Made by a program: the position numbers and the translations under genes. Shown one piece after another: positions 28,801 through 57,109 of a DNA stretch of 64,000 nucleotides. The number at the start of each line of letters is the position of its first letter. Within the stretch, counting starts at the first letter, position 1. This stretch comes from Gracilinanus agilis (lineage: Eukaryota): contig NC_058133.1 in NCBI RefSeq assembly GCF_016433145.1, positions 250,998,629-251,062,628 on the forward strand, in the 5' to 3' direction. A model generated the notes under the pieces. The model was not told the origin of the DNA, ran no database searches, and saw nothing but the letters and a program-made list of their open reading frames with translations.

Positions 28801-31800
28801 AAAGATCCTGGGGTGGCAATACATATTCTTTCCTGACTCCCCCCCCCCCAATTTTTCCAACTTGTGATTCCCACTCCTTCAAACCTGATCAAAAATTCCC
28901 CCATCAGAAATGAGTCTGGTCCGGGCACGAGTGTTAATCTCCAGAGTATAGCGGAGATGAGGAATCAGGAGCTGTGGAAAAAGGACAAGTAGAAATAAGA
29001 GAAAAGAAAGCTTCTATCCCACAGGACATTAGATTCTGGGTAAGGATGGTGCTACAATAGAGGAGCAGTGTGGATGATTACATAGCTGGCCTATGATGAG
29101 AACAGATGGGCAAGGAGATGAAAATGACCTCTGAAGGTGCTTTGATGGACAAGAAACTCAGGTAAGAAGAAAGTGATTGTTTTCTATGTATTGAGAGGGA
29201 AAAAATAGCAGCAAAGATGAAAGTGGAACTGAGAATATCATATTTGGGGAATGGGAGAAGACCAGACTGATTGGAGCAGAGGGTCGTGTATATGGAGCCA
29301 AATTATAGAAAGCTTTGAATACCAAGATGAGGTGTAGGAGTCATTTGTTGTAGTGTCTTAAGCAAAAGAGTCACTTTATGTGTTTTTTTTTTTTAAACCT
29401 TACCTTCCATCTTAGAATCAATACTGTGTATTGGTTCTAAGGCAGAAGAGCAGGGCCAGGGTTAAGTGACTTGCCCAGGGTCATACAGTTAAGAAGTGTC
29501 TGAGGTTTGATTTGAACCCAGGACCTCTCCAAACCTGGCTCTCAATCCACTGAGTCACCAGATTGCCCCTCCCCCAATGTGTATTTTTTTAGAAAGTTGA
29601 GCATTCCAAGTTCATCTGCATATTTTCTTCTGATTAGCTCAAAGTCTTTAATCTTATTTTCTCTAGGGCTTGGAAGTTTCGGAATCAATCTGAATTGTTG
29701 ATTCCTGGTGGCCACACTTTAAATATATATTTATAAAATATCTAAAATCTCCCTCTTACATCTTTCTTGAATCATTGAGGTATTGCTTATCATCTGGATC
29801 TCTGTAATTGCTTTCTACATTACCTTCCATTCATGGCTTCTCTTCTTCCTGCCAACAATGGTGGGTTTCCTAGAGTACTGATAAAGGCCCAAATGTACAT
29901 CTTCAGCCTGGACCTTTCAGTCTCCACTGCTATATGTCTAGCTAACAAAAATCTCTCTCCTCTTGAATGGCACACTGTGAGCACAGAGTTAACTTGTCTA
30001 AAGCCATACGCACCATATGTGCCCCCAATTGTATCTCCATTCACAGCAATTCTTCAGTTTCTGTCACTCAAACTCAAAAAATTACTCAAGCCTGACTCCC
30101 TTGCTTCCTCATCTCTAATCACCCAGCCCAGTTGAATCTTCCTTTCTAATGTCCTAGGTCCTGCCCTCCCCTTCTCATAGCCACCTCATTCCTGTAATTT
30201 ACAACCTAATTGGCTTCACTATTTTTAGCCTATCTCCATTCCACTATGCAGCTTAATCTTAAAACACCAACTTTCAACAAAAATGTCCACAAAGTGCTTA
30301 ACTTGATCTTAAAGGTCTCCACAGATCTGGTCCCCAATACCTTAAAAGCCTCTCACTTCTCCCCTGCACAAACCCTCCAATTCATGTAGCCTGGTCCACA
30401 CACTTTCCTCCCATCTCTGCCATGGTCATTCCTGACTCTGCTCAAAGTGAAGGAAGAAAGGGAAGGCAAGTGAATGAGAGGGAGTAAGAGAACAGAAAAA
30501 AGGGGAGAGTGTAGGAGCAAGGGAGAGGAGAAGGAAAGAAGAGAATGAATGGGAGAGAGAGTGCAAACAGATGTTAGGAAGAGAGCACCTGAGTGATTGT
30601 AAATTGTAGTACCTGTTTGTATGGCTATCGTGAGCTGCAAAGTGGGCCAAGAACTTCCCTACACTAGATTGTGACCATTCTAAAGGTCTCTGAGGCCACA
30701 TCATTTCTTGAATCCTTCAGAGATTTCATCAGTGTAAGTCCCACAGGAAGTTCTTAGCACATACTGAGTTTCCACATTATTACAGTATGGAACCTTAGAA
30801 GGTAAGAATTACAAAGAACCTGAGATATCATTGACTCCATTTCATTTCACAGAGGAGGAAATTAAGGCCCATAGAAGGAAAAAGAATTGTTCTATCCTTT
30901 GAGCTGCCTCCCAGGATTCTTTGTTGTCAGGTGAAACACATAATGCCTGATTGGTGTGAAGAAACCCCCCTACCTGACTATTCCCCTATAATTGGATTTA
31001 GCTATCTTTTCCATTAGGGTCTGTGGTGGCAATCCATCACTGCCCTAGGTTAACAGGAGTGAAATGTGAAGGGTAGCTTAAAGGTAGAGTGAGTACCTTG
31101 AAGATGGGGTGCATCCCTGGGAGGCACCTCATGGTGGCTACAGCAAATACCTCAGCCACCAAATGAGTCTTCAGCAGATGTGCTTGCAGTTCATGTAGCT
31201 GGAAGTCAGAATTTTTGACCCAGGCCTTGGCCAGGAGCCAGGTGAGGGAGGGATCTGAGGGCAGGAAGAGTGGTGGGACTGGAGAGCCAGAGCAGGGAGG
31301 CTGGAGCTGGAGGACAACAGAATCAGTACAGTCATAAGCCTGGAACTGCATGGGACTTCAGAGGCTGAAGGGAGGTTAAATGACTTGCCCAAGATGAGAC
31401 ATCATCAGAGGAAGGAATGTGAACCCAGGGTGTCTTCTTCCATTCGCTGCTCTTTTAATTGAATTACATGTACAGAGTAGGGCATTAGATCTCTGGATCT
31501 TTGAAAGGAAGAGAGATTGATGAAGCAGAGCAGAGAAGTCAGAGGTCTTGGTTCCAGGGAAAAGGTTGGTGGGGAAGCAGTGGGTGGAGGAAGGCTGGAT
31601 AAGGGAGCTAGGTAGAAGGATGCCTGGGTTCCCTCACCTGGATGGCCAGGGGTAGCAGCTTCCCATCAGGCTCCATCTTAAACATAACTAGGGGGGCAGC
31701 TAGGTACTGTCTCTCCCCCTGGATCACATTGGGCTGGATTCCATCCAACAGGGAAAAGTCAGCTTCAAACAGGCAGCCCTCCTGGAAAATAGATTAGTCT

Positions 31801-34800
31801 GAGGTCAAGGATCAGAGGATAATGTAGAACATTTTTAATACCAGAGAGTGTCAAAAGGCTCAGCATAAAAGACTAAAAGAGAAGTCCAGATTCTTAAATG
31901 AGGTCCAGACCTACAGAATCTGAAAACCAGGAGGCCTCTTGGAGTTTGTTTAGTCTAACAGTCTCATTTTACAGTGGAGGAATCTGAGGCCCAGAGAAAT
32001 GAAATGACTTGTCTAGGATAACAACTACTCCAGCACAATGGGCATTAGAGACCAAGTCTGTGGACTCTAGAACCCTTTACCCCTAGAGAAATTAAAATGC
32101 CCCTTTGTTTTGGTGGTCATTTTCTTCAGTCTTCTAATCCCCCAAACCAAATCTAAACTCTATAACTATTTGACTTCTCTCTTTGACATGATCTTCTACC
32201 TCCTCAAACCTATCATCTCCCTCACTTTCAAGACATGGGTTTTTTTCTTCTCTGAAATATATTTCTCCTTTTCTCCAACATTTTATCTACTTTCCAAACT
32301 CCCAAGATTTCCTCTCTCCACTTCCTCCAAGAAAGTTTATTTAAATCATTTATCTGTTGATTCCCTCTTCTCTTACTTTCCTTGTGTTCTGAGATCCAGG
32401 ACTGGGATCCATTTAGAGAGTCTCATTTGTTTACCTGGTCTTATCTCCATCTGCTTCCTCTTTTTCTATCCTATTTCTTTTGTAATAGTAGGTTCATTTT
32501 ATTCTAATGAACCTTTTCCTTGTTTTTACATATCCTTAAGATTTCCCCAGAATGAAGTTCTGTATGAAAGATGGGTGTTGAATTAGTTTTGTTGACTACC
32601 TCTCTTCTATCAATACCATCTATGGCATTTCAACCTATCCCTTTCCCTAAACTAATATATCTATGTAAGTGTGTTTAATATATCTATGTAAGTGTGTTTA
32701 GAAACTAACCTAACTTAATTCCTAGGAGCCTTTTTAATTCTCTTGGTCACAGAAATGCAAAGGAAGAAGAAAGAATCAGAGTAGAGAAGAGACCAAGAGG
32801 AAAGGAACTACCTGGAGTTTTTTTTCCAGCTGAACCTGAATCTCTTCTGCCCCTGGGGGGATCACAAGTCTTGTGGGGAGTGAAGTAGACCTTCTCAGTA
32901 GTGTGGGGTTGACCCCATTGAGGAACTGGTAGCCAAAAAAATCATCATCCTTCCAGGACTGGCGCACCTTCTCTGGGAGCAGAAGGGAGATATCATAGTA
33001 CCCCAAGTACCTCTGTGGTACCAGGTATCAGCCCCCAATCTTGGGATGCCCCAGATGCTGTCAAGAGAGAAGCCACTTTAAGGGACATATTTCTGTGTAA
33101 AAATGGTTAGTGGAAGGGCAACAGGGATGTAGTATATGTGGGGGAAGGGAGGGTAGAAGTGAACTGTTATTGAAATGGGGAAGTGGAGCTGAGAATGTCA
33201 GGGACGGGTTATTGGAGAGGATCACCAAGCTTATGGAACTGTTACTGACTAGCCAGGGTACTCTTGCTGCACCAGAAGATTTGGTCAAAATCTTCTAAGC
33301 TACTCCAGGAGCTCAGAAGGGTGTACGTGCGTTTAAGAACAATCTCAGTCATTCTAGGATAAGGAGTAAAGAAATTAGTTGCTTGAATTTCAATCTCTCT
33401 CCCTCTCCCTCCAAATTCCCCAATCCCCAGATTTTCCATTGTGCCTGAGAGCTCCCACCACAAACCCCCAGTTTTTGCCCCTGGTCTCATTCCTACCCTG
33501 CAATCAGAGTTCCTTCAAAGTCAATCTTCTTATTCTCATGGAATCTCACATCCAGGGGTAGATCTTTCTCTGATTTTGCATCCACTGACAAGAGTATCCC
33601 TTTCTTCCAGGTGGCCCAGCTGGAGGTCCATAGAATTAAAAGTTAATAGGTCAGTGAAGGGTTAAAAAACAAGGGTTAGCAGAGATTAGAGGCCAAAGGG
33701 CGCAGTATAAATAAATTGGGACTCAGGAGTCAAAGCTTAAGTAACTGAGAGATCAGGGGTCAGGGACATCACCGATATAATCTCCTTCTTTCCTCCAGTT
33801 CCTCTTCTCTGTGTTTCTGAAACAAGCCCTGGACATCCTTCCCCATCATCCAAGCTGGGAAGACATGGGAACAAGGTCTCATTTATCTGTTCCATCCTCA
33901 CAGGTGTGTTCCCAGGCTGCTTTCTATCCCTGACCCCAGCTCACCAGTTTCTTTGAGTCTCATCCCCATTTTCTATTCCTCTCTGCCTCCATGTCCAACC
34001 CATTTCCCATCCCTCTCTTACTTGCCACCCTATGTTAGGACAGGTTTCCTGTTCTCATGTGTCCTTACCTCACCCCTCCTATCCCTATTTTTCCTCTGCC
34101 CCAGTTTTGTATGCTGTCTTTTCTGTCTCTACCCAACCCTCACTCACTCTCCTATTGCCTGTTCTTCAGAATCACATTCTTCACATTTTCTACTCTGAGA
34201 CCTTTGTTGTCACCTGTCTATGTCACCAGCTCCCTGGATTCACATACTGTACATTTTCTTCCTCATGTACTCTGTCTTACCCAGATAAAGATACTTTTTA
34301 ATGTCATATAAATAACATGTAATTTTTCTTTCAGCTACTTCTATTTCTGTCCTCCTGTCCTCTTACTGTATCCTGACTTTTTTGTGCTTTCCCTTCCTTA
34401 TATCTTCTGCCTTTCTTCTGATCCTTCCCTCAACCCTCCCTCTTGTTTTTCAACTTTAACCCCAACCACACCTCACTTTTAGGCAAGTCACATTCCTTTA
34501 ATGAGCCTGAGTTTCTTTTTCTTTTAAATAGGGCATTAATTTAGATGATCCCAAAGCTTCCTTCTAAGTCCTCTGCCCTCTCCCTGCCCCATCTCCTACC
34601 CTTCTTACCAGTAGCCTCAGGCAGGCAGATGATGCCATCTCCCTGCACCCATCTGTAGCAGGGGAACACTATCTCCTTCTCCTCCATCCTCTTCTCAGAG
34701 GCCCAAACAGTTATGTGGTTGCAGAACCAGGCATCCTTTAGGAAGAGATGGATTTTCCGGAGCTTCACAAATAAGAGGGGCCCCAGGTCTTCTGAGACAT

Positions 34801-37325
34801 CTACTTCAAAATCCTCCATCTAAGATGGCAGTGGAGGAGAAGGTAGGAGAACCTTTTAATTAAACCTTAGTGTCAAATATTGTCCCCATTTTATAGATAA
34901 GGGACCTGAAACTTCAAAAGGAAAAAGATTTTCCTGATGTGATCAATATGATAAAATTTCAATCAATATGGTAAGATGGTCTGTTGACACTATGCTTTAT
35001 ATAGAGATATTGAAAAGATGCTTTAGAGGAACTGTCTACTGTGCAATGCCATAAACACACACAGATACTCCCTGGCCCCCCCAGTATCAGACTTGGAAAG
35101 CATCTGAAGCCATCTACTCCAACTTTTACCCAAAGAAGAAATTCAATTTTCTTTCCATTACTGGGCTAGGCAAAGTGAGTTAAGTGATTTTCCCAAACTC
35201 ATAAATCTAAGAGGCCTGATGTGAATATAGAAACTTCCCCTCTCTAGGTCTACTTCTCAATATATTGAGCCATCTAGCTGTCCACTAATTCAATTTTATT
35301 TCAAGAGAAATAGTTACCCTTGGTCCAGGTACTATGCTAGGTGACAAAATGAATACTCTCATTGTCCTCAGGAATTTATGTTCTATTGTAAGGATACAAC
35401 ATGTTAAGTAAATAAAAAATGTTTTTCCTGGACAGAGTCTAAGAACTATCTCAGGTAGAATTTCACCTGAGTTGAGCCTTAAAGGAAAATGGGGGTCTTA
35501 AGAGGCTGAGGTGAGGAGAGAGAGCCTTCCAGATGTGGAGATTAGTCTGGATCAAGACAAAGTAGGAACAATGTCTTTACCACCTCCTCCCCAACCAGTG
35601 ATCATCCAGCCTTTGCTTAAAGATTTCTAATCAAGGAAACCCAATCCTTTTGAAGTCAACACATTACCCTTTGGGATTATGCACACTGTTGGGTAATTTT
35701 TCCTTTTATTACCTATAAATTTTGTAGGACCTTCAAATGTATATGCATTCCATTTTTAGGGTCTTCTTTCACTCTGGGACAGAGGTAAGTTATTAAGTTG
35801 AAAACCACTTAGAAGACAATGAAGATCACATTCTCAACTTCTGCAACCCAGAGTCCTGTTTTTCTTCCCACAGTCAAATAAGGATAAGAGAAATTAGCTT
35901 CCTGCTGGTGGAGGTAATCCAGTACAGATTCTTCTTACAATTTGTATGATCTTGCATCTCAGTATTCTCATTTTTAAATGGAGGAGAATATGGAAATTTG
36001 TATTGTGTGACAACACTGGAATAACCTATATAAGATTGTTTACTCTCTTGGGGACGGGTAGAAGGAGAAAGAAAAGTTGGATTTCAAAAAGTCAGAAAGC
36101 AATTGTTAAAATTTGTTTCTATATAAATAAAATAAATAGAATTTTTAAAAAGTGAAGGAGTTGGATAAGATGATCACAGGGCAAATTCATAATAGGAACT
36201 TGGTCAATCGAATAAAATCTGGAAAGTTCTTTCTATTTGTAATGCCTATTTATCCATTAGATACCATCATGGACGCTATAGGATCATGCCTAGGTAGGAA
36301 TACTAATATGCTATTAGAAATGAAAGCAACTGTTTCAGAGAAACTTGGGAAGACTTGTATGAATTGATCCATAGTAAAGTGAGCAGAACCAGGAGAACAA
36401 TATATACAATAACAACAGTATAAAGAGAAATAGCTTTGAAAGAGTTAAGAACTCTGATTAACCAACCCCATCAAGGTACTCATGATTTGTTGGACTCAGA
36501 ATGCAGATTAAAACCCATAATTTGGACATGGCCAATTTAGGAACTGGTTTGCTTCACTGCATATTTGTTACAAGTGTTTTGTTTTTCTTTTTCATGGTCA
36601 TGGGGCAGGATGGGAGGGAGAAAAAGTAGAGTTTTGTTTACTAAAATTAATATATAAATGCCAAGACAAGAAAGAGGGGGGAAAAAGGACTATAAAAACA
36701 TACCACATTTCCATAGTATTTTTCAGAAGTTGTACTGATTGGTATGTTGGCCAATCAACCTTAATTTTATGGAGAGAGAAACTGATTCCCAGAAAGAAAA
36801 AGTGATTTGGCTACCCAGGAACAAACTAGGTCCTCAGAGGGCAGAGGTGAGGCATCTTAGCCCAGATCCTCTGGCTCCAAATTTACTACTGTTTCTACAC
36901 ATCCCCCAGCACTATCCCCTACCCTCCAAATTTTTGGCTTTGGGGTACATGGGTTTCCCTGGGCACTGCAGAAGGCCATACAAAGGCCCTGAGCATGCCC
37001 TTTTAAGGTTTCCCCTTATATAAATCCATTGGCTTACAAGAAGAGAGTTCCAGGTGTCCTGGTTCAGTATCACTGTGCTTTAAAAATCTTCAGCCCAGAG
37101 CAGTTTCCTGACTCTCAACTGTCCCAGTGTGCAGCTCCCAGACTACTCAGTCCCCCAATCTCCCCTTCACATCCATACCCAGCTTCTGACCTGTCCTCGA
37201 GTGGGCCGCAGCTGCAGCCCCAGTTCCGCCTCTGCACGCTGCCCAACCAACCATAGCTGCACCTGGTTGGTTGACCCTGAGAAGGCGAAGCTCCCGGTGG
37301 CCACACGTACTCTGTACCGACCCAT
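22852..37325 (-). CDS. ALOX12: Intact arachidonate lipoxygenase, ALOX12 (platelet 12S-LOX)-type, 665 aa, 14 exons (copy A)
   Basis: Exons: 37325-37191 (135), 34819-34609 (211), 33854-33773 (82), 33619-33497 (123), 33353-33250 (104), 32972-32812 (161), 31781-31638 (144), 31306-31097 (210), 28971-28885 (87), 27975-27806 (170), 25100-24979 (122), 23557-23457 (101), 23316-23149 (168), 23031-22852 (180). All GT-AG; 1998 nt with no stops. Fe ligands retained ([21 protein letters not shown]-terminal ENSITI). Adjacent to RNASEK like human ALOX12; the orthology call rests on synteny and motifs. Confidence 0.92.
23582..24321 (+). mobile_element. Solo LTR (740 bp) in ALOX12 intron 11
   Basis: TGTTA...TTACA termini and a 4-bp TSD TGGA (23578-81 / 24322-25). 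Internal AATAAA at ~24128. Absent from the paralogous intron of copy B (~44480). Confidence 0.85.
26022..26225 (-). mobile_element. SINE1_Mdo-type SINE with a 17-bp TSD
   Basis: TSD cacttgcctagactttt at 26004 and 26226. Confidence 0.92.
29384..29570 (-). mobile_element. SINE1_Mdo-type SINE
   Basis: T-tail followed by the reverse-complement SINE body. Confidence 0.8.
32653..32698. repeat. Perfect 23-bp tandem duplication
   Basis: taatatatctatgtaagtgtgtt x2. Confidence 0.95.
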
Positions 37326-38056
37326 CACGTTTGGAGACTCTGGATGCTGGGAGAAAAGTAACGGGAAAGTTACTTGCTCAGAGCTCTGCCCACTGCTGTC
37401 CAGTGTCTGTCCTGGTAACCAACTCAAGTCTTGTAGTGGAGAAGCCCTTCCCATATCCGCCTATGTGCCTACCCAGTCCCCACCCTTCTCAGAATCCAAG
37501 CCTTCACTTTCCCCACCCTGGGACAGGCCAGGACCTGCCACAGAAATTTGGGCAGGGAAGGGGGAGGTGGGGAGACAATGTCTGGAGTTTGTTTCTAGGT
37601 GATTAGGACTTCCTGAATGGGAAATGAGAGCTTGTATATTGGGGACAGGAAACTTGCCTTTTTTGTTTTGGGTGAATGTAGGGAGCAGATAAGTAATTTG
37701 ACAGAGACCTAAAAGAATATAGCCCCAGTTTCTTATATAACTAGGAAAAATTTCTCCAATCCCATGTAGCTTTAGTTAGAACCCTCCCATAAGTAGTAGT
37801 AGTCTTATTTTATAGATAAGACTGCTGAAAACCAGAAAGCCTAAATGACTTGTCTGAATCACACAGTTGATAAGTGTCTGATAGGATTCCTACTCTTGAA
37901 TCAAGCCTGATGTTCATTTCAGTGAGAAAGCTTTATTTAACTTTTTCCTTTCATCCAGCATGGAGGTGTTTTTAAGAGTGGGCTCTGGGGTCCTTTAGAG
38001 AAAGGACTAAAGTCCCTGTGAGCTTGGAAAGGCATTGTTGGAAGGGCTGGGGGTGG

Positions 38057-38229
38057 GAGTCTGAGGAGTGACTTCTCCACTAGCTTTGACTTCAGGTATT
38101 CATAAGGCAGGTTTTACTGAACATTTTGATCTCTTTCTCAAGGGAGTCCATATTTTCCCTAATACTGCTCAACACAGCCAGTTTCCCAGAGCTTTAGAAG
38201 TATTCATCTTTGTACTATTCCAGGAGAAC
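38057..38229 (-). pseudogene. Relic lipoxygenase exon 14 (third LOX paralog, copy C)
   Basis: Translates VLLE*YKDEYF*SSGKLAVLSSIRENMDSLEKEIKMFSK(frameshift)LPYEYLKSKLVEKS, collinear with copy A exon 14 ([56 protein letters not shown]). Confidence 0.85.
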
Positions 38230-38459
38230 TGGGCCAGATAGAACAAGCATTCCCTTTCAAAGATCATTGAAAAAGCTCCCTACTGTCCCTAAAGGAATTT
38301 AAGATTCATAGCTGTAAGGAATAAAAAAGAAATCTTAAGCATCCTTCTGGGCCTGTTCCTACCACTACTCCATTTCATAGATGAAATTCAGACTCAGAGA
38401 GGGGACTTGTCCAAGGTCACATAAGCTGATATTCAAGCCTAGATTTCACTCCAAATCTA

Positions 38460-39000
38460 GAGTTTGTTAGTAAGGTTTCTTAAGTACTAGACATTGTGCT
38501 GGGACAACTAAAGGCCAAAGATAATCCAGTCCAGGCATTTGGAGGAGGCAAGTTAAACAATATATATGTGCAGGCTAGATATAGGATAAATAGGAAATAA
38601 TTAACAAAATGAAAACACTAAGATTAAGAGCAGTTGGGAAGGACTTCCCGAAAAAGACAGCATTTTAGTTGAGACTTAAGAGAAGCCAAAAAGTGAGGAG
38701 GGAAGAACATTCCAGGCCTAATGGACAGCCAGATAAAATGCCTAAGGCTTAGAGATGGAGTATCTTGTTCATAGAACAGCAAGAAAGTTAATGTCATTGG
38801 ATCAAAAAGTATGTGGTGGGGAGTATGGTGTGAGAAGGCTAGAAATCTGGGTGGAGTGGGGGAAGAGGACTACATTAAGCTAGGTTTTACTACCAAAAGA
38901 GATTTTTGTTTTTGATCCTATTGGTAATAAAGAACTAGTGGTATTTAAGGAAAGATACATTGACTGTTGGAAGATGGATTGGAGCAGGGAGAGACTTTTA
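38460..39000. mobile_element. Old L2-like LINE fragment between the relic LOX exons
   Basis: L2-like phrases (taagtactagacattgtgct; tttgatcctattggtaat; gaagatggattggagcagggagagact). Recognised by resemblance only. Confidence 0.55.
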
Positions 39001-39068
39001 TACTACACTCTCCATCTGAGATTTAGATCCAACCACTGGCTCTCAATTTTAACTCCCCATCTACTCAC

Positions 39069-39231
39069 TATGGCTGAACTTGACCCAGTTGCCATATTAA
39101 AGAGATCTGGAGGCATTTCTGGTGTATACAGATTAGAGTGGCCATCACCATTTCCAGTGTCACATTCTTTGTGCTGGTGGGGGATTAGGCAAAGTGCATG
39201 GGGCATTAGGAACCCAGGTGTACCAGTCCAG
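39069..39231 (-). pseudogene. Relic lipoxygenase exon 13 (copy C)
   Basis: Translates [19 protein letters not shown](frameshift)[34 protein letters not shown]. The donor GTGAGT is intact; the acceptor is mutated to CAT. Confidence 0.9.
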
Positions 39232-40499
39232 ATGGAGAGAGAAAACAAAAAGCAGAATCTAGAATCACTCAGAAGCAAACACATGATTTCTCAGTTTCTT
39301 TTCTGAGGAAAGGATAATTTAATCAACTTCATTTTATATTGTTTTGTGCCTCTATATACTATAGCTTCATATTCTTAGCATGTTAGATATAATATTAGAT
39401 AAACAATATTATAATGCTAAGTTGTAATCATAATAAATTTAATAATAAGGAATAATTCTAATTATTCCTTGATTGAATAGATCTGTGGATGAGAACCAAT
39501 AATTGTAGTGTGCTTAAAATGAATTCTCTCTACGTATCTTTGCCAAGGGAAGTTTGTGTATACCTTCATTGTCTTGGAATATATCCAAAAGTTTCTGAAA
39601 CTGTTATCTCATTTGCTCTGAAGTTATAGAATAACCTTGGCTATCCTCATTATCATCATGTATGGAATTGAGGATTATGTAATCTGTCTAAAGAAAAGAG
39701 ATAAGGCAATATTATCTTGACCTTCTTGACAAGAAAAACCCTCACCCCTTCTTGCCAAGAAGGTACCCTGCCTCCAAAGGAAGACCCAACTTTCACAAGA
39801 AAAACCCCAGACCTTGTTGCCAAGAGGAGGGTGCCTGGCTTCCAAGGGAAGATGGATGACCTTTACAAGAAAGACCCTACTTGGCAGACCTCTTGTAAAT
39901 GGAATTTCTGTAATCTAGATGTCTCAGGCTACAGGGAAGTCTGTAGACCATGGAGCTGTGTGAGATGGGCATACATTCTGTTTCACTCAGAAGTTTGCTC
40001 CCAGTATTTTTCTTTTACATTGACCCTATTCAGTTTTACACTTCAATTGGTGAGCAGGGCTGGGCTTCATTCCTGATTTCATGATACTGTATAAGTGAAA
40101 AGCAAGAAACAACAAAGCAGAACTACTCAACTACTCGGTGGAATGGAGGAAGAGGAGATATTGGGGAGAGTAAGGGAAGCCTGGGTGATGTTTGTGGCAG
40201 ACACACAGAGACAGCAAACTGTTGACTGTTGAAGTTTTGGGAGTGTTCTGGGTTCTTTGAGTTTGGAGGAAGCTTGGCAGACAAGACTGGGGAGTGTGCA
40301 GTTTAGGGAAGTATTTCGAAGGTGTCTTAGTGGGATCTTCTCCAAAGAAAGAGAAGGGGAGGGAAAGAGATTCAGTTTTTTGGCTATACTTCGAGTTTCA
40401 TTCATTCAGTAAACATTAATTGGGCTCCACTTTCATGCTGTGCACTTAATGCATTAGGTCTTACAATTGGATACTGCACTACTTTAAATCCCTGCAATT

Positions 40500-41900
40500 T
40501 CTTCTGTGTGGGTAGGTAGATCTTGGGTCAATTGTAGCTCACAGCTGGAGGTGCTACTTCATAAACTCCTTAAAAGTTCTCCAAACCTGCTTTGGTCTTA
40601 ATCTCGACTTGGCTCAAAGGGAATGTAGAGTGTGAGGCTACATTTGAACTCAGATGTTACAGATTCCCTGCCCGGCACTTTGTCAACTGCTCCACCTTGC
40701 GGCTGCTGGAGGGGAGGGTTTGTCAATTGCCCTTTTCTTTGTATCCCCTTTCCTTTGTCCTCTAATTCCCCAAATTCTCTCCCTCTTCCCCACCACCTCT
40801 TTCCCTCACTCCCCCAAAGTTAGCTCCCACGATTCCTCGCAAACACTCTCTGGTCCCACCACAAAGGGGTTTCAACCATTCATTAGTTCCATGCTCCACA
40901 TCGGCTTCCTTCACGTTGCAGGCAGCCGCCTTGGGCACACAACAAAGGAAGGACGCCATGGCGAGGCCAGTAGGGCGGGGTGAGGGGCCGGAGCGTGGGT
41001 CTTAACTAGCGGAATTCTGGCTTCAGGTGCCTGGGCTGAGAGCAAGCAGGAAGAGAGACCTTTGTGGGATCAGGGGAGGTGGTGTCAAGGAAGGCCTGAG
41101 GGCGGAGCTAGATCTGGGAGGGGAGGGGTTCCTGGGTGGGTAGCGGNNNNNNNNNNNNNNNNNNNNNNNNNNNNNNNNNNNNNNNNNNNNNNNNNNNNNN
41201 NNNNNNNNNNNNNNNNNNNNNNNNNNNNNNNNNNNNNNNNNNNNNNNNNNNNNNNNNNNNNNNNNNNNNNNNNNNNNNNNNNNNNNNNNNNNNNNNNNNN
41301 NNNNNNNNNNNNNNNNNNNNNNNNNNNNNNNNNNNNNNNNNNNNNNNNNNNNNNNNNNNNNNNNNNNNNNNNNNNNNNNNNNNNNNNNNNNNNNNNNNNN
41401 NNNNNNNNNNNNNNNNNNNNNNNNNNNNNNNNNNNNNNNNNNNNNNNNNNNNNNNNNNNNNNNNNNNNNNNNNNNNNNNNNNNNNNNNNNNGGGGGTTCC
41501 GGGGGGGGTGGGGGGCGGGGGGGGGGGCGGACTAGAGATCAGGGGAGAAGCAGTTCAGGAGTAGGCAGGAGGAGGAGGTGTCCTCCACGGGGGCGGGGCG
41601 TGCTCCAAACTGGGTGGAGCCAAACGGTAGGGAGGTGGTGGGGTCGGGGTGTGGGGGGAGCCCACAGTGGAAGCTGTGGGGAAGAAATTAACTAAAATGG
41701 TCCTAAAATGGCAGGACAAGAAGGGATGTGGGAGGAGCCACAGGGAAAGATCCTTTTTTCTCTTATTTGAATTGGTCATAAATTAGAAATAGCATCTTCT
41801 CACCATTTCTCAGTTAAAATCCAAGTTCCTGGAATCAGTGTGCTTTTGTGGCTCAATTTGAAATATATCATTAGAAAAGCAGTTGTGATCAATTACATAA
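40500..41900 (-). pseudogene. Duplicated RNASEK 5' stub (promoter, 5'UTR, truncated exon 1, start of intron 1)
   Basis: gccATGG at 40959 encodes MASFLCCVPKAAAC (RNASEK: [14 protein letters not shown]). Intron-1 block ggggtttcaaccattcat (~40866) matches agggtttcaatcattcat (~19722). 5'UTR ttcaggtgcct matches 19974. 41735-41870 aligns with 20663-20820. No exon 2 or 3 was found. Confidence 0.88.
41147..41491. other. Assembly gap (N-run) flanked by extremely G-rich sequence
   Basis: 345 N; the true length is unknown. Confidence 1.
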
Positions 41901-42620: not shown

Positions 42621-45600
42621 GTCTATTGGGAGAAGCAAACTTTATTTGGATTTCAGAGTTCTAGATTCAAAACCCATATTTGATACTTACTAGCTGGATG
42701 ACTTCAAATTTAGCTTCTATAACTATGCATATGTAAAATAAGGATAAAAATACCAATATTATTTTTCTCAGAATTGCAAGGATCATATAAAAATATACAT
42801 AAATTACTCTGCAAATCTTAAAAGGAGAAGCTAAAAGTGAATTTTGCCTTTTTCTGGAATGATAAAGACGGGATCTGACTAAAATATGTCAGTTTTGCAG
42901 TAAAGGAACTGCATTGCATTCCCTCTCCCACCACCACCCCCCAACATGAAAGAGACAAATTTGGAACAAGATGAAAGACGTGCTTTATACACAGGCAGTG
43001 ACCTCATAGAATGATTTAGCCATGGTGCTGATCAGAATGATGATAGAAATAGAATGAGGGTAGATAAAAGAGGCGTAGCCACATTCATGGAGGTCAGACC
43101 TCAATGATTGTTTGGAAAGTTACTTTTAACCTTTTGAGCCAGGGAAGATGATTGTGATTTCTCATATCATCCTTCCTGGTGATATGAAAAATAGTCCTGG
43201 TCTGTGGCCATATGCCAGTATTGCAGTTATTTTGTTCCATGAGCAACATAGTTTGAGATGGCTTATAGTATATAGATTTATCCATTTATTTATTGCAGAT
43301 TTTAGCAAAGAGACAGGGATATGTAAGGACACAGAAGAAATGATGTAGTATAACTAGGGGGACTATCAGTGATAAGAGAAGAAAATTGGAAACTTCATAT
43401 CTGATTACACTGGGAGCTTTCCAATCCTTGGACAGAATGATAACAGAGGGCTTCCTGTCCCAGGAAGAAAGTCAAAGGGAAGATTATGTCTTTCCAGGAA
43501 TAGCAGCACCAGAGAATGACAAACATATGTGGGGAGTGGGAGAGGAATATGCCAAGGAGCTGAGTATGAACTAATGACCCCTGATACTGGAGGGTGATAT
43601 TAAAGACCCCCCCCCTCAAAGACTGAGTGAAAAAGGGAAGATAGATCAGATATAGGGACAGAACCTCAAACTTGTGATTTTCGTATTTATAGTTATGAGA
43701 TTAAAAAGACTAGGATTAGGAAAAGAAATGGGGCTTTTCCAACCCAATTAGAGTAATAGTCAGCCAGATGTTTTTAAGTAGCTAAGTGTTTTAAATGGTA
43801 ATGCTGTTCTCTATCCTGCTTGGCTGAAGGTACTCATAGGACAGATCCAGGCCTTCATTACGGGCCAGAATCTTTCTTTCCAGCGTATCCAAATATTCCT
43901 GGAAATGGCTCAGTATAGCTTTAGGCTCAGGTCCTGAGAAGTATTCCTCCTTGTGATTACCCAGGAGTACCTGAGGCAGAGAAAGAAGGCATCTCAGAGT
44001 CATAAGCTTCAGGTTTGTAGACTCTCAGCTACCACTTCAAGTCCCTTACCCCTGGGACTTCTACTCTCTTTGAGGGCCCTGGCTCTCACCCTGTTTGGCT
44101 GGATCCGACTCAGAAGCCATACCACAGCCATATGGAGATTGGCCTGATAGACTTTGGGTAGTGTGGCCATCATAATCTCTAATGTTACATCCTTTGTGGT
44201 TGGTGGGGGCTGCTGCATAGTGCCTGGAGCATTAGGAGCCCAGGCATACCAGTCTTCTTGTTGGTAGAGAGAGAAGCTGAAATCATTCATGATCCCAGGG
44301 ATTTTAGCTCTTAGTTCCTTTCCCCATGAAGGTTCTCTTCAGTCCTGAGGAAGGAATGTATCTGGGCCCCTTACCTGTCCCTGATTAATAGCTGAGCATG
44401 TGAAGATACACAAAGTGAGAAAGTGGCAGAGGTCAGCCCTGGATTAGAAGGAGAAAGGAAACCCTGGAAGAGAAAAGAGTTTGTGGAAGAAACTGAAGAC
44501 TCAGGGAAAAACAAGGGCTGGTGTACTCAGGCCAAGATCTTTGATATATAGATTTAGGAAAATTTTTACTCTTAAAAGTTGTGTTATCAAATGTTTTATT
44601 TATCCCTTTATTTTAGAGAGATTTAGAGGGCGTAAATAATTTCTTCCAGTCATAATATTTTTCTCTGGCAAATCTCCTTACATTGTAGTAGGGTTTAGAA
44701 TTGCATATTAATTGTATATAGTCAACTGCAGTAGATAGGGGAAAGGACCAGAAAGCCTAAAGATTAGAAGTGAAAAGGAAAGGGATACTGACCACAGGAA
44801 CTTAGTCTTAGATGGATGAAATATCTCTCAATTTTATCCATGAGTAGAGGTGGTGAAAATGGTGGCTAGAGATCCTAAAATCTACTTATTGGCAATAGAA
44901 CCCCACTGCCGTGTGGTGTCGTATGTTTTATGTGGGTCTTGGTGCCTTATGTTTATGGGCTAGGTTTGTTTCTGTATTGTTTGTAACCACGTGGGATAAG
45001 GATAAGGTACAGAGGTCTGAGATCATCTTAGGTGGCCCCTAGGCTTGGAAATATTTTCTGAAGGGTATTGGCACTCAGAGGGCTTTTAGAGAGGGCTCCA
45101 GGGAGGGGTTAGAAAAAAGAGGAGATGACTTTTCAATATTACAGATGTCACATCTTATCTCGGGCCTGAGCCCCACACAATCCAATCTCAGTGATCTCTC
45201 TGCACCAGGCCTGTAGCTCAAGGTCACTCTGTACAACCTTGTCCCCTGAATAATGGAGATGAACTATTCCTTGCACATACCTGCTCCCCAATAGAGAAAG
45301 GGATTAAGGAAGATCAGCTGAAGGACACGCTCTAGAGGCATGTCTCCCATGATCACAGAATCATAGTCTGAAGGAAATTTAAGGAACATTCTCTTTTATC
45401 CCAAACTGACTAAAAATCCTTTTTATATCATTCCCAACAAGATATGATTCTGTCTTCATTTGAAGATCATTAGTGAGGGGAGACCTGAGGTATCCCATTA
45501 CCTTTAGTGTAGCTTTATATGTCTGGCAGCTGTTCCTTACATCAAAGTTTAGATCTTTCTCTTTCCCACTCTTTTCATTGCTCCTAGAGTTGCTCCTTGA

Positions 45601-46176
45601 GGCATCACAGAATAATTCTAATTCTTCTGCAGATGCTGGTCCTTTAAGTGATTGAAACTTATTCTGTTCTTCTCATCAGATCAGCAGAACAGAAAGTTAT
45701 TCTGTTCTACCTTTTCCCCTCCCTTTGGATAATGAGATTCTTTGTCATTTTCTAGCCCTGCAGCATCTCTTCTATGCCTCTGACTTTTTATACATCACTA
45801 ACATTAGTTCAGCAATCTCATTAGGATCATGGGATTTCATTGATTTGTGTCCAGTGAATAGAAATTGTCCAAAGGAGTTAGGTGCTCTCCTGCTATCTCT
45901 ATGCTTGTCTTGGGTTTCAATTTCCTTCTCTCCATTTTTCTTCTTTCCAATCCAAGATCTTTCTTCTCTACATCATCAGCTCATCCAGCCATACAGGAAT
46001 CCTATCCCCTCTCTGGTATTTTTTGCCCAAATGTAACTTAGAAAGCCTTTTATTATCTTTAACTTTGATCATCAGATTCAGATAATGTTGTTCTTGACAC
46101 TGTTCTTATAAGATTCTTTTGTGTTCATTCTCAATTATCTGCCCTCTTTTATTTTAATTAATTAATTTTCAAGCCT

Positions 46177-46330
46177 TTACTTTCTATCTTAGAGTCAAGA
46201 CTAAGTATTGTTTCCCAGGTAGAAGAGTGGTAAGAGCTAGGCAATGAAGGTTAAGTGACTTGCCCAGGGTCACACAGCTAAGAAGTGTCTGAGGTCAGAT
46301 TTGAACCCAGTGCCTTCTCTTTCTAGGCCT
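46177..46330 (-). mobile_element. SINE1_Mdo-type SINE
   Basis: Reverse-complement SINE body, 5'-truncated. Confidence 0.75.
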
Positions 46331-46569
46331 GGTTTCCTTTTCATTTAAATATTGTTTCACCTTTATCTCATCTTTAATGTATTTCTATTTCTGTGTATTT
46401 TATTAGGTATTCATTTATTAGGACATTAACACACTGTACTAATATGCAGTTATAAATTATAGTATAACTACATGCATATAGGTGGTAAATAAATATACCT
46501 ATTTTGGAAGTGCATGCTCAAAAATACTTTTTCATGATCACAAAAGTTAGGGAAACCAATGATCTAAGA

Positions 46570-46776
46570 CAGGGGTCAGCAACCTTTTTGGCCGTGAGAG
46601 CCATAAACGCCACATTTTTTAAAATGTAATTTCATGAGAGTCGTACAGTGCTCACGGTGCACGCTCCTGTAATAGCCCCTGAAAAAAAATTGACTTTATG
46701 GCTCCTGCAGAAAGAACCATATCTGGTCCTCAAAAGAGCCAGATATAGCTCAAGAGCCATATGTTGCCAACTCCTG
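46570..46776 (+). mobile_element. hAT/Charlie-type MITE (207 bp), same family as 42454-42620
   Basis: Terminal inverted repeats CAGGGGTCAGCAAC / GTTGCCAACTCCTG; perfect 8-bp TSD ATCTAAGA. Strand is nominal. Confidence 0.92.
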
Positions 46777-48080
46777 ATCTAAGAGATTAAAGCCCAGCCC
46801 TGAGTAGTTAGTACAGTTTAGACTTTGTTGATTTCCCTATGAATCAAGGCATCTTTCTGACTATGTAAATCATCATGCCAGTTATGAAGGTGAGGGAAGA
46901 TATGGAATTTATGTTCTGTCTTTGCTAAGTATCCTAATTGTATTGTAGTTGAGTGAATTTACTTTTGTCAAATAGGATGTGGTGCATGAGTATCTTATTT
47001 CTTTCCATTCCCAAACTAGAAGCGTAGTACTGTTAGGTTTGGAGCTTAACACGTGCTTTTTACCCTTTGCTCCATTTATCCTTTTCCTTTGAATAAGAAA
47101 AACCTTTTCATTGTCATGGTTTTTGTCACGAGTTGTTCTTCCCTGAATCTCATTGGTTCCAGTTTTCTGTCTTGCTTATTACCTATGCTTCCTGCATGTT
47201 TGCCACCTGCTTGATTTATTAGTAGTTTCTTTCTAAGATTCTGTCTTCTCTGAATTACTGGGTATCTCTACTAGTATTCTTCCTCCTTTGTTGTTCTCAC
47301 TGTGTCTCTCCCTCTCCATCTAGATTGCTAGATTTATCTAGAACACTTGGTCCTTACTTTTTAATTCAAACTTTTTTTTGGCCCCATTTAACTTATTTCT
47401 TATATCTGTATATCTAAAGACAAGTCACTTAATGTTGCTGAGTCCCAGTTTCTTCTCTTGTAAAATGGACATACCATTCATAGGTATGAGTAATGTACCT
47501 TATAAGTGTGAACTATTATTGTTCCCTAGAAAGTCAGATAACATAAATAACCCTAACTCTTGCAATAACTTTCATCTTTTCAGATTTGTTTTTTGTTTGC
47601 CTAGTTTAGATTGTCTGGTTCTGGGTCCCCTCTTGCCTTTTCATTATTGAGATCCCTTAGCCCATCTTTCCCTTGTACTAGTCCATTCCTCTGCTAGGTT
47701 CCCCTTTCTCACCAGGAGATTATTTCCAGAGCCTGAGTGCATCATGGGCAGAGTGGATGGAATCCCCAGAAGCCCTCTGTCAGCAAGGTCATCAGGAGGG
47801 CAGAGGGATCGATAGGTCAGACAGGCTGTTGCCCTGCAGAGGATATCCAGATGACCTCCCCCACCAGTGTTCATCACCTGTGTTGGTTGAATGGGGAATT
47901 GGGATGGAAGTAAGGGCTGAAATATAGGAATTAGAAAGGAAGTTGGAAGGAATTCAGAGAATAAGGTGATTTTTTTTGTTTTTCTTTCTTTCTCATGTTC
48001 CCAATTATTTTTGGCCTAGACTATTGTAATAACTTTCTAACAGCCTTCTTGATCTCTAGACTCTTCTTGTCTGATCATTC

Positions 48081-48548
48081 TGTTAGGGTTCAAAATGGGT
48101 GGCCTCCAGAGGAACACATGAGACAATGCAATCAAAGCAGGAGAAAGCTTTATTGCCAGTACGCACTGGGGAAACTCATCAAAGAGAGTCCCGCCCCATG
48201 CATTCAGAAGAGGGAATATATATGTTTCTAGGATATAGGTGCCTTTGTCTTAGGGTGAGCTAATAGTTAGATAGAGGGAGTAGGGGATGCTTTCAGGTGC
48301 TGCAGGACATGATTCTTAATCTTCAAGGTTGTTCCGCTTAGGAGTTGTGTCCCTGGGCTGTCAGCCAAGAGTTGGGTCCCTGGAACCTTGAGTCAGAGAG
48401 ATAACTGACCTGATTTGAGTCAGAGAGATAACTGACCCGCTTGGGCATAACGTTATCCAAAACCCCCTGCTTAATTTGCCAAGTTTAGTTTTTTGGCCAT
48501 AATATTCTTAATAAGCTATAATATTTCTATAAGCTTTTTGCTATAACA
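48081..48548 (-). mobile_element. Solo LTR (468 bp) in pseudogene intron 9
   Basis: TGTTA...TAACA termini; 4-bp TSD ATTC; minus-strand AATAAA at 48149-54; internal 27-bp tandem repeat at ~48389-48440. Confidence 0.85.
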
Positions 48549-48578
48549 ATTCTTCGGTGTGGTCAGAATAGTCTAGAT

Positions 48579-48770
48579 CAGTGATTCCCAAAATGTGTTT
48601 ACCGCTCCCTGGTGGGTGCTGCAGCGATCCAGGAAGGCGGTGATGGCCACAGGTGCATTTATCTTTCCTATTAATTGCTATTAAATTTTTTAAAAAATTA
48701 ATTTCCAGGGGGCTAAGTAATATTTTTTCTGGAAAGGGGGCAGTAGGCCAAAAAAGTTTGGGAACCACTG
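48579..48770. mobile_element. Second hAT MITE family (192 bp)
   Basis: Terminal inverted repeats CAGTGATTCCCAAA / TTTGGGAACCACTG; perfect 8-bp TSD GTCTAGAT. Empty paralogous site at 28205. Confidence 0.93.
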
Positions 48771-49967
48771 GTCTAGATAATGCATAGATTTGATGCTGCC
48801 ATTGCTGTCTCCAACATTAAGTGGTTCCCCATGCTTACAAAATAATATACAAATATTTCAGTTTGGCATTCAAAGCCATCCCTAATCTGGCTCCATCCTG
48901 CCTTCTCACTTCATTTCATATTATTCACTTTTACACACAGCTAAACTATAACAGTTTCCCCATGTATGGAATATAATTTCTCCACATCTATGTATTGAAA
49001 TCTTTCTCTTTCTTTGAGATTCCCCTCAAATTCTACTTTTTTCTATGACTCCTTTCCTGACATAGGTAGATTTGATCTCTTTTCTTGAATTTTACATTCT
49101 AAGCTGACCTTTCCTCTATATTTAAATTATCTTCTAATATATAGTGATTTCTATATCTTTTCCATTCTGCCAGATTGTAAGCTTACTGAGAGCAAGGCGT
49201 ATTCATCTATTTACAGTGCCTTGTGCATACTTGATACTTAAATGTTTAATTAGATAAAAAAATAAAACAAAATCAGGTCATTGATTTGTAGGGTTAGGGG
49301 AGGGCAAAGTCTTCATGGGTAAAGAAGCCAAGATAGAGAGGCATGTCCCTCCTTAACTCCTCCAAAGTTTTCCCAACTCCTGGGTCCCACCCCTTCATAC
49401 CTGATCAAAAAATCCCCCAACAGAGATGAGTGAGGTCTGGGCACGAGTGTTGATCTCCATAGTATAGCGGAAATGAGGGACCAGCAGCTGTGGGAAGAAG
49501 GTAGGTGGAAATGAGAGAGGAAAGCCTTGATCCCCCACAATAGACACTTGACCAGAATGATGCTACAGTAGAGGAACATTGAAACATGTGAACAGATGAC
49601 ATAGCTGGTCTGGGATGAGATCAGATTTAGACACGAGAATATGAACCTGATGACCTATCAAGGCCCCTTCATGGATAAGAAACAAGGCTGAGAAAGAGGA
49701 TAGGACTTTTGAGGGTGGCAGTTCTGTAGGAAGAATAGCAGCAAAGGAAGGCTGAACCTGTCATGTTTGGTGAATGAAAGATATGAAGTTGATTGAAGTG
49801 AATGGTTGGTTTGTAGGATCTAATTAATAGAACATTATGAATACACTAGAGAGTAAGCATGATTTCATTGTAGGGTTTTGAAAAAGCATTTCTTGATCCA
49901 TATTTGGAGGAAGTTTAGGATTCTGTTACAATTTTTATTCTCCCTTCTTAGAAGCTCCAACCAGGTT

Positions 49968-50176
49968 TTTTTTTTTGTTTGTTAGTTTTTGTTTTTTTTT
50001 AAACCCTTGTACTTCGGTGTATTGTCTCATAGGTGGAAGATTGGTAAGGGTGGGCAATGGGGGTCAAGTGACTTGCCCAAGGTCACACAGCTGGGAAGTG
50101 GCTGAGGCCAGGTTTGAACCTAGGACCTCCTGTCTCTAGGCCTGACTCTCACTCCACTGAGCTACCCAGCTGCCCC
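49968..50176 (-). mobile_element. Young SINE1_Mdo-type SINE
   Basis: T-rich tail followed by the full reverse-complement body ending cagctgcccc. Confidence 0.9.
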
Positions 50177-56989: not shown

Positions 56990-57109
56990 CCAACTGCCTT
57001 TTTAGAGAGTCCACTGTGTTCAGCCCCTTGCTGTGTTCCAGGTTGGAATCTCAGCTCCTGCCTGCCTGTCTAAACTTCCAAATCTGCTTTTTAAGTTTAT
57101 CTACAACGG

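What the first reader, a model, noticed from the sequence alone, without database searches (positions are those of the whole stretch)
38057..39231. Hidden third lipoxygenase: orphan exon 13 and exon 14 relics just upstream of ALOX12
Seen: two frameshifted, stop-containing exons in the correct order and strand, not visible in the ORF track. They end ~730 bp before the ALOX12 ATG, so they form part of its proximal upstream region. They are much more diverged from copy A than copy B is, and show IHQ..LQIS..WQLG and LVEKS, recalling ALOX15 (FHQASLQMSITWQLG; VVENS). No exons 1-12 were found before the RNASEK stub. Inference: this is the 3' tip of an ALOX15/Alox12e-like neighbour, captured when the duplication breakpoint fell inside that gene.
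Basis: partly seen in the sequence, partly recalled or inferred. Interest (0 to 1): 0.75.

Follow-up and report, generated by a model that had tools for sequence, protein, structure and literature searches.

The report
Decayed ALOX15 tail upstream of ALOX12
Two broken leftover exons from the end of a lipoxygenase gene, most likely the marsupial ALOX15 gene, lie as dead DNA just upstream of an ALOX12 gene; they record an old rearrangement of the gene cluster and encode nothing.

Summary
On the minus strand, 39231-39071 is a relic of lipoxygenase exon 13 and 38229-38063 a relic of exon 14. They are in gene order, separated by an 841-nt intron remnant, and end 738 nt before the ATG (37325) of the intact ALOX12-type gene (copy A). 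tBLASTn E-values are about 1e-16 for exon 13 and 3e-6 for exon 14. No relics of exons 1-12 are present.

Proteins alone do not settle the origin. The relic is 60% identical to marsupial ALOX15 and 57% to copy A, and AU tests reject nothing.

DNA and RNA contigs do settle it:
- The source organism holds a paralogous contig 86.5% identical over exon 13 plus 75 nt of intron 12, against 74% to A and 69% to B. That contig carries the base missing at the relic's frameshift.
- A spliced mRNA contig from a related species matches exon 13 at 91% and continues into the ALOX15-specific end of exon 12.

The relic evolves neutrally, is further eroded in the related species, and shows no spliced transcripts. 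Capture at the edge of the A/B duplication fits the data but is unproven. This is an ordinary partial pseudogene.

The parts
39232..39306 (-). Remnant of the 3' end of intron 12 (pyrimidine-rich). This is the last stretch upstream of exon 13 that still matches the paralogous ALOX15-type contig.
   Evidence: In one search, record 6 of run X1 lies on 39136-39306 with 23 differences and 1 gap in 171 nt, then runs on unlike. The sequence was read.
39071..39231 (-). Relic of lipoxygenase exon 13. The acceptor AG is lost, 1 nt is missing at 39176-39177 (frameshift), and the 3' end is about 4 nt short. A donor-like GTGAGT is kept at 39068-39063.
   Evidence: It is 72-74% aa identical to marsupial ALOX15, 64-70% to A types and 51-55% to B types. 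Its DNA is 74% identical to A and 69% to B, against 86.5-91% to ALOX15-type contigs.
38230..39070 (-). Remnant of intron 13 (841 nt, against 117-119 nt in copies A and B). It holds a MIR-like element at about 38340-38460 and a high-copy repeat at about 38574-38841.
   Evidence: The sequence was read. Contig depth is 11,600x and 1,900x in bins 38574-38841. There is no homology to intron 13 of A or B.
38063..38229 (-). Relic of lipoxygenase exon 14. It has three in-frame stops (38217-38215, 38196-38194, 38114-38116), a 7-nt shortfall at about 38126-38127, and has lost its terminal stop.
   Evidence: Its DNA is 60% identical to A and 63% to B. The related species lacks 38151-38426.
37326..38062 (-). 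Spacer between the relic and the start codon of the intact ALOX12-type gene (copy A). mRNA contigs of copy A begin at about 37480-37513.
   Evidence: The ATG at 37325 comes from tBLASTn. Records 16, 17, 23 and 24 of the RNA runs are.
40753..40965 (-). Stub of RNASEK exon 1 (40965-40918, reading MASFLCCVPKAAAC) plus the start of intron 1. It marks the downstream end of the copy-B duplication unit.
   Evidence: blastn aligns 19860-19907 with 40918-40965 at 81% and 19619-19753 with 40753-40898 at 71%. The sequence was read, and the true RNASEK exon 1 was located.
22852..37325 (-). Context: copy A, an intact ALOX12-type gene and orthologue of Monodelphis 12S-type ALOX12. Exon 13 is 23146-23316 and exon 14 is 22855-23028.
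43791..63750 (-). Context: copy B, a B-type ALOX12-like gene that is a pseudogene in this genome. It has a stop and a 4-codon loss in exon 12 and a stop after the WLLAK exon's HEL.

Best explanation
What it is: the stretch is an unprocessed partial pseudogene. It consists of the decayed last two exons (13 and 14), the intron between them and about 75 nt of intron 12 of the marsupial ALOX15 orthologue. It lies in the same orientation as the flanking genes, between a stub of RNASEK exon 1 and the intact ALOX12-type gene (copy A).

What it does: it has no coding capacity and no detectable spliced transcript, and it drifts at the neutral rate. It does nothing as a gene and survives as a fossil of a rearrangement in the tandem lipoxygenase array.

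Most likely mechanism (inferred, about even odds): the ancestral order was ALOX15 -> ALOX12 -> RNASEK. A tandem duplication then copied a unit running from ALOX15 intron 12 to RNASEK intron 1. This would give ALOX15 -> B -> RNASEK stub -> ALOX15 exons 13-14 -> A -> RNASEK.

Shown here: the identity as lipoxygenase exons 13-14, the lesions, the ALOX15-type nearest relative, the neutral evolution, and the adjacency to the RNASEK stub.

Inferred: that the relic and the A/B pair came from one event.
For: Real homology: searches give E from 1e-16 to 3e-6, in the correct order and strand.

ALOX15 origin:
- The source organism's run holds a second contig on 39136-39306 that is 86.5% identical and has an extra A exactly at the relic's frameshift.
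- RNA contigs of a related species lie on 39176-39231 with 5 differences in 56 nt. They continue with letters that translate to GQHSSVHQGQ, the exon-12 end of all five marsupial ALOX15 proteins; A/B types read QHS[AG][VI]NQGQ.
- The five marsupial ALOX15 proteins are the five nearest of 167 lipoxygenase C-termini.
- The tree places the relic in the ALOX15 clade with 88/77 support.
- Branch-by-branch placement gives about 0.65 likelihood weight to the marsupial ALOX15 grade and 0.145 to marsupial ALOX12 types.

Not from A or B: exon DNA is only 74%/60% identical to A and 69%/63% to B, while A and B are 81%/80% identical to each other. The relic shares no intron-13 or 3'-flank homology with A or B, although A and B align there at 70-78%.

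Non-functional: the lesions are listed above. The related species shares the frameshift and has lost 38151-38426. Its relic region is about 92% identical, the same as the flanks at 93%. There are no exon 13-14 splice joints, only colinear contigs at depth 3-7 against 38 for ALOX12 exon 1.

Duplication edge:
- The RNASEK stub lies at 40753-40965.
- Much of the intervening DNA is repeat: contig depth is 88-600x at 39378-40047 and 989x at 40584-40717.
- The relic's minimum nucleotide distance to ALOX15 is 0.49 per codon, roughly 0.2 changes per site. That is about half the A-B non-coding distance, as one event would predict.
- A fused Monodelphis gene model (P0132) joins ALOX15 exons 1-13 to exons 2-14 of a B-like lipoxygenase. 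This shows that ALOX15 sits directly upstream of the ALOX12-like genes in an opossum.
Against: - Protein data alone are not decisive. AU tests do not reject relic+A (p 0.55) or relic plus the marsupial ALOX12 clade (p 0.48).
- Exon 14 is equally far from ALOX15 and from A.
- The relic lacks three ALOX15-derived residues: it has C in HQ.C, and D and E in MDSLEKEI.
- The paralogous contig was seen only as a table row, so its identity as the live ALOX15 gene is inferred.
- The 86.5% identity over 171 nt is somewhat higher than a single A/B-age event predicts. P(24 or fewer differences) is 0.0015 to 0.056 depending on the assumed rate.
- Exon 13 is significantly better preserved than exon 14 (Fisher p 0.019). 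Both points hint at a younger event or at gene conversion.
- The predicted sister position upstream of copy B lies outside the window.
- About 535 nt of single-copy DNA (40048-40583) between the stub and the relic is unexplained.
Confidence: 0.5

Rival explanations
1. The relic is ALOX15-derived but arose in a separate, later event. Either a whole or larger ALOX15 duplicate once lay between the RNASEK stub and copy A and later lost exons 1-12 by deletion, or an older relic was partly overwritten by gene conversion from the live ALOX15 gene.
For: - Identity of 86.5-91% at the intron-12 end and start of exon 13 is higher than the A-B non-coding identity of 66-78%.
- Exon 13 is better preserved than exon 14 (72% against 49% aa identity, p 0.019).
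- At least two paralogous contigs cover 39264 in the source organism.
Against: - Averaged over both exons, the decay (about 0.2 changes per site) fits the age of the A/B split.
- With the local A-B intron-13 distance (78% identity), the 171-nt stretch is not significantly too similar.
- No trace of exons 1-12 remains.
Confidence: 0.33
2. The relic is a partial copy of the ALOX12-type lineage (copy A, copy B or their ancestor). Its ALOX15-like residues would then be retained ancestral states or chance changes.
For: - AU tests cannot reject relic+A.
- Placement weight of 0.145 falls inside marsupial ALOX12 types.
- HQ.C and D.LEKEI match A-type sequences.
- The first half of exon 14 scores slightly better with Monodelphis ALOX12 (35.4 bits) than with ALOX15 (32.7 bits).
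Against: - DNA identity to A (74%) and B (69%) in exon 13 is far below the 86.5-91% to the ALOX15-type contigs.
- The matching mRNA contig carries the ALOX15-specific exon-12 end.
- There is no intron-13 or 3'-flank homology to A or B.
- Placement as sister of window A has weight 0.001.
Confidence: 0.08
3. The relic is the remnant of an older, otherwise lost paralogue, such as a marsupial counterpart of Alox12e or a stem ALOX12/15 gene.
For: - The quick tree puts the relic outside marsupial plus eutherian ALOX15.
- Placement weight of 0.175 falls on the ALOX12|ALOX15 stem.
- The relic shows a mosaic of ALOX15-derived and ancestral residues.
- Alox12e lies next to Alox12 in mouse. That arrangement is from my own knowledge; PMC9068934 notes that Aloxe12 is close to ALOX15.
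Against: - Identity of 86.5-91% to a present-day ALOX15-type sequence, including intron, is incompatible with a split older than the therian ancestor.
- None of the epidermal-type signatures is present: IPNGP, EKDIV and RMQKT..KFLG, as seen in P0023, P0020 and P0025.
Confidence: 0.06
4. The resemblance is a chance one in intergenic DNA.
For: - Pfam finds nothing in the short pieces.
- Exon 14 alone is weak.
Against: - E-values run from 1e-16 to 3e-8.
- Two exons lie in the correct order, strand and phase.
- There is DNA homology to exons 13 and 14 of both A and B.
Confidence: 0.01

Closest known systems
Marsupial ALOX15 orthologues (for example the Monodelphis, Gracilinanus, Dromiciops, Petaurus and Vombatus proteins P0201, P0198, P0200, P0244 and P0243). 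They have been characterised as 12S-lipoxygenating enzymes (PMC9068934).
   Same: - They are the nearest relatives of the relic by protein.
- By DNA and RNA contigs the relic matches them at 86.5-91%.
- The exon 13/14 structure is the same.
- The relic shares S in LQ.S, L in SL.W, Q in WQLG and V in VE.S.
   Different: - Only the last two exons are present.
- The frame is broken in at least six places.
- The C-terminal iron-ligand isoleucine and the stop codon are lost.
- Three ALOX15-derived residues are not shared.
Lipoxygenase pseudogenes in the eutherian 17p13 / mouse chr11 cluster: ALOX12P2 (the human Aloxe12 remnant), ALOX15P1, Alox12-ps1 and Alox12-ps2. The names occur in the papers found, and PMC9068934 mentions 'functionless pseudogenes'.
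   Same: They are dead lipoxygenase copies lying among live ALOX genes of the same tandem cluster, created by local duplication.
   Different: - This one is a two-exon fragment in a marsupial.
- It derives from ALOX15 and abuts the promoter side of ALOX12.
- No orthology to any eutherian pseudogene is shown.
Copies A and B of this window (ALOX12-type genes)
   Same: They belong to the same gene family and have the same exon boundaries. Exon 13 is 74%/69% identical at DNA level.
   Different: - There is no shared intron or flank homology.
- A and B are closer to each other (81%) than either is to the relic.
- They differ at the diagnostic exon-12/13 context.

Membership tests
Lipoxygenase (ALOX12/15 group), C-terminal exons 13-14 | Significant sequence similarity to the C-terminal part of the lipoxygenase catalytic domain | tested here: met
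   - PDB phmmer gives E 3.5e-8 to rabbit ALOX15.
- tBLASTn gives E about 1e-16 for exon 13 and about 3e-6 for exon 14.
- Pfam on pieces of 32-38 aa found nothing, because the pieces are too short.
Lipoxygenase (ALOX12/15 group), C-terminal exons 13-14 | Exon order, strand and exon boundaries as in ALOX genes | tested here: met
   Exon 13 comes before exon 14 on the minus strand. Their boundaries align with those of copies A and B, and a donor-like GTGAGT is retained.
Functional lipoxygenase gene or exon | Open reading frame, splice sites, and the C-terminal Ile iron ligand followed by a stop | tested here: not met
   There are two frame-breaking indels, three in-frame stops, a short exon-13 end, a lost acceptor AG and a lost terminal ...SxxI-stop. 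Exons 1-12 are absent.
ALOX15 lineage (marsupial orthologue) | Nearest relative at DNA level is the ALOX15 gene or mRNA | tested here: met
   A paralogous contig is 86.5% identical over 171 nt. An mRNA contig is 91% identical over 56 nt and carries the ALOX15-specific exon-12 end GQHSSVHQGQ. The contigs were seen only through read laying tables.
ALOX15 lineage (marsupial orthologue) | Phylogenetic placement inside the ALOX15 clade | tested here: inconclusive
   - The tree gives 88/77 support.
- Placement weight is about 0.65 for ALOX15, 0.175 for the stem and 0.145 for ALOX12.
- AU tests reject no alternative.
ALOX15 lineage (marsupial orthologue) | ALOX15-derived residues in exons 13-14 | tested here: inconclusive
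   - Shared: S in LQ.S, Q in WQLG, V in VE.S, L in SL.W and R in F/IRE.
- Not shared: S in HQAS (the relic has C), and A and D in LA.LDKEI (the relic has D..E).
ALOX12-type A/B clade of this window | Closer to A or B than A and B are to outgroups, with shared intron and flank homology | tested here: not met
   Exon DNA is 74%/60% identical to A and 69%/63% to B, against 81%/80% between A and B. No intron-13 or 3'-flank alignment exists, while A and B align there.
Alox12e (epidermal-type 12-lipoxygenase) | Epidermal-type exon-13 signature, as in Heterocephalus P0023 and fragments P0020 and P0025 | tested here: not met
   The relic lacks IPNGP, EKDIV and RMQKT..KFLG. Only eutherian Alox12e sequences were available for comparison.
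Processed (retrotransposed) pseudogene | Intronless copy with a poly-A tail | tested here: not met
   An 841-nt intron-13 remnant and an intron-12 end are present.

The most novel reading that the evidence does not exclude
The 5' part of the relic (the intron-12 end plus the first ~100 nt of exon 13) may be kept unusually similar to the live ALOX15 gene by recurrent non-allelic gene conversion within the lipoxygenase array. Alternatively, the relic DNA, which lies -0.55 to -1.8 kb from the ALOX12 transcription start, may have been co-opted as a regulatory element or upstream exon source for ALOX12.
Probability: 0.08. Interest if true: 0.45.

Novelty: new member of a known kind. Interest (0 to 1): 0.3.

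Why it matters
The relic matters mainly as a marker.
- It shows that ALOX15 once lay, or still lies, directly upstream of the ALOX12-type genes in this marsupial lineage.
- Together with the RNASEK exon-1 stub, it marks a junction of the tandem duplications that built the marsupial ALOX12 A/B array.
- That helps to reconstruct how the therian ALOX15/ALOX12 cluster evolved. ALOX15 is reported absent from monotremes and present from marsupials onward (PMC9068934).
- It also warns annotators and gene predictors, because stray lipoxygenase exons next to a live promoter invite fused or chimeric gene models, as in the fused opossum model P0132.

It has no evident biochemical function.

Tried and rejected
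- Pfam on the relic pieces and on the antisense 122-aa ORF gave no lipoxygenase hit, because the pieces are too short (one search failed on a 17-aa piece).
- Rfam and Tandem Repeats Finder on 37300-41146 found nothing.
The ALOX15 loci of Dromiciops and Gracilinanus could therefore not be fetched, and the relic's intron and flanks could not be aligned to a real ALOX15 gene.
- Protein phylogeny was tried with a quick tree, a careful tree, AU tests and branch-by-branch placement. It favours ALOX15 but is not decisive.
- An apparent colinear match, 21318-21521 with 41930-42138, is a shared MIR-like repeat and not duplication homology.
- Human and great-ape ALOX12 entries returned by the search (P0282, P0283, P0287) were left out of the comparisons from then on. 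No contig that I take for human was met.
Exon translations were concatenated only inside scripts for alignment and trees, with X at every break.
- The N run at 41147-41491 was left untouched.

Full report
**Locus**

All genes in the window lie on the minus strand. The window holds:
- two ALOX12-type lipoxygenase genes: copy A (ATG 37325, stop 22852-22854) and copy B (stop 43791-43793, exon 1 near 63640-63750);
- the true RNASEK gene (exon 1 near 19800-19900);
- an assembly gap or masked run at 41147-41491, which I left untouched.

Marsupial proteins are the closest relatives. Copy A is nearly identical in its C-terminus to the Monodelphis 12S-type ALOX12. Copy B matches a Monodelphis 'ALOX12-like' protein at 88%. 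The genome is therefore an opossum-like marsupial and this is the ALOX12/RNASEK/miR-497 region.

A and B are colinear over about 20 kb at 65-82% identity, non-coding DNA included. B-type and A-type proteins both occur in American and Australian marsupials, so the A/B duplication is old. Downstream of copy B there is a stub of RNASEK exon 1 (40965-40918) with the start of intron 1 (40898-40753).

**The observation**

Between that stub and copy A, two lipoxygenase exon relics lie on the minus strand: exon 13 at 39231-39071 and exon 14 at 38229-38063.
- tBLASTn with marsupial ALOX15-like proteins gives summed E-values of 1e-16 to 1e-15 for exon 13.
- Exon 14 gives 3e-5 to 3e-6.
- A 38-residue piece hits rabbit ALOX15 in the PDB at 3.5e-8.
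- blastn aligns both relic exons to exons 13 and 14 of copies A and B.

Lesions in exon 13:
- The AG acceptor is lost.
- One base is missing at 39176-39177.
- The 3' end is about 4 nt short before a retained GTGAGT.

Lesions in exon 14:
- Three in-frame stops.
- A 7-nt shortfall.
- No terminal stop.

The relic ends 738 nt before the ATG of copy A. No relics of exons 1-12 are found anywhere in 37330-43790. Pfam does not recognise the short pieces. Rfam and tandem-repeat scans are empty.

**Which lipoxygenase: protein evidence**

I collected lipoxygenase proteins by searching exon 13 of copy A, by reference, against cluster representatives. I then searched the C-terminal 124 residues of two full-length hits. 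Exon translations were concatenated only inside scripts, with X at each break.

- The five marsupial ALOX15 proteins are the five nearest of 167 C-termini, but only by 60% against 57% for copy A.
- A careful tree puts the relic in the ALOX15 clade with 88/77 support.
- AU tests do not reject a relic+A clade or a relic+marsupial-ALOX12 clade.
- Grafting the relic on every branch of a 46-sequence backbone gives likelihood weights of about 0.65 in the marsupial ALOX15 grade. The stem between ALOX12 and ALOX15 gets 0.175, marsupial ALOX12 types get 0.145, and sister of window A gets 0.001.
- The relic shares some ALOX15-derived residues (S of LQ.S, Q of WQLG, V of VE.S) but not others.
- Exon 14 is uninformative.
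- The epidermal-type (Alox12e) signature seen in P0023, P0020 and P0025 is absent.

**Which lipoxygenase: DNA and RNA evidence**

Laying public contigs on 37100-41100 resolved the question.

- The run that holds the window (organism A) tiles the stretch at 100%. It also holds a second, single-copy-depth contig on 39136-39306 with 23 differences and one gap in 171 nt (86.5%).
- That stretch covers the first 96 nt of exon 13 and 75 nt of intron 12. The one gap is an extra A behind 39174, exactly where the relic has lost a base. Beyond 39306 this contig is unlike the window.
- In a related species (organism B, about 92-93% identical), contigs from two runs labelled as probable RNA lie on 39176-39231 with 5 differences in 56 nt. 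They continue, exactly at the exon-13 boundary, with letters that translate to GQHSSVHQGQ.
- That is the exon-12 end of all five marsupial ALOX15 proteins. All A- and B-type proteins read QHS[AG][VI]NQGQ there.
- This is therefore a spliced ALOX15 mRNA, and the relic's exon 13 is much closer to it than to copy A (74%) or copy B (69%).
- The relic also shares no intron-13 or 3'-flank homology with A or B, although A and B align to each other there at 70-78%.

I therefore put the ALOX15 origin at about 0.85. The caveat is that I saw these contigs only as table rows.

**Function**

Nothing suggests any function.
- Organism B carries the orthologous relic with the same frameshift but lacks 38151-38426, which includes the first 80 nt of exon 14.
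- Its relic region is about 92% identical, no better than the flanks at 93%.
- The probable-RNA runs show no joint between the relic exons. They show only colinear low-depth contigs (3-7), against 38 for ALOX12 exon 1, whose transcripts start near 37480-37513.
- The same runs show no coverage of the RNASEK stub.
- The relic's intron has been invaded by repeats, with contig depth up to 11,600 at 38574-38841.

**How it got there**

It would give ALOX15 - B - stub - relic - A - RNASEK.

In favour:
- The layout fits: the stub and the relic are neighbours, separated largely by repeats.
- A fused opossum gene model (P0132) shows ALOX15 directly upstream of a B-like lipoxygenase gene.
- The relic's overall decay, at least 0.49 nucleotide changes per codon relative to ALOX15 or roughly 0.2 per site, is about half the A-B non-coding distance, as one event predicts.

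Against:
- The 171-nt stretch is somewhat too similar to its paralogue (P 0.0015-0.056 depending on the assumed rate).
- Exon 13 is significantly better preserved than exon 14 (p 0.019). A later event, a deleted full copy, or gene conversion therefore remains possible.
- About 535 nt of single-copy DNA at 40048-40583 is unexplained.

**Verdict**

The capture mechanism is plausible but unproven. The object is an ordinary unprocessed partial pseudogene, useful as a marker of how the marsupial lipoxygenase cluster was built. It is not a hidden third lipoxygenase in any functional sense.

Noticed in passing
window 43791-63750 (minus strand); exon 12 near 44348-44464; WLLAK exon at 55619-55633: Copy B is a pseudogene in this genome. 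Exon 12 has an in-frame stop and lacks four codons (QHSA), including an iron-ligand histidine position. The WLLAK exon reads HEL*Q where copy A has HELQAH. Monodelphis has an apparently intact 666-aa orthologue (P0304).
   Followed up: partly
window 40753-41146 and 41492-41700 (minus strand): The RNASEK exon-1 stub (MASFLCCVPKAAAC) lies below a GC-rich, promoter-like stretch that is interrupted by the N run. The two probable-RNA runs of the related species show no contigs on the stub (depth 0 at 40852-41100), so no activity of this duplicated promoter was seen there.
   Followed up: partly
protein P0132 (Monodelphis, 1026 aa): This is a fused gene model joining ALOX15 exons 1-13 to exons 2-14 of a second B-like lipoxygenase (reading 'WQGS' in exon 13). 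It implies at least four ALOX12/15-group genes in tandem in the opossum: ALOX15, two B-like genes and A.
   Followed up: partly
window 37466-37513 (minus strand): A 991-nt contig of run X8 uses 37513-37466 and then continues with unrelated letters at 37466. This may be an alternative first exon or splice of the ALOX12 transcript in the related species.
   Followed up: no
window 38574-38841, 39378-39650 and 40584-40717: These are high-copy interspersed repeats, with contig depth of 600 to 11,600 against a single-copy level of about 28. They have been inserted around and inside the relic. A MIR-like element also lies at about 38340-38460.
   Followed up: no
window 40048-40583: About 535 nt of mostly single-copy DNA lies between the RNASEK stub and the relic. 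It has no detectable match to RNASEK intron 1 of the A unit or to any lipoxygenase, and its origin is unknown.
   Followed up: no
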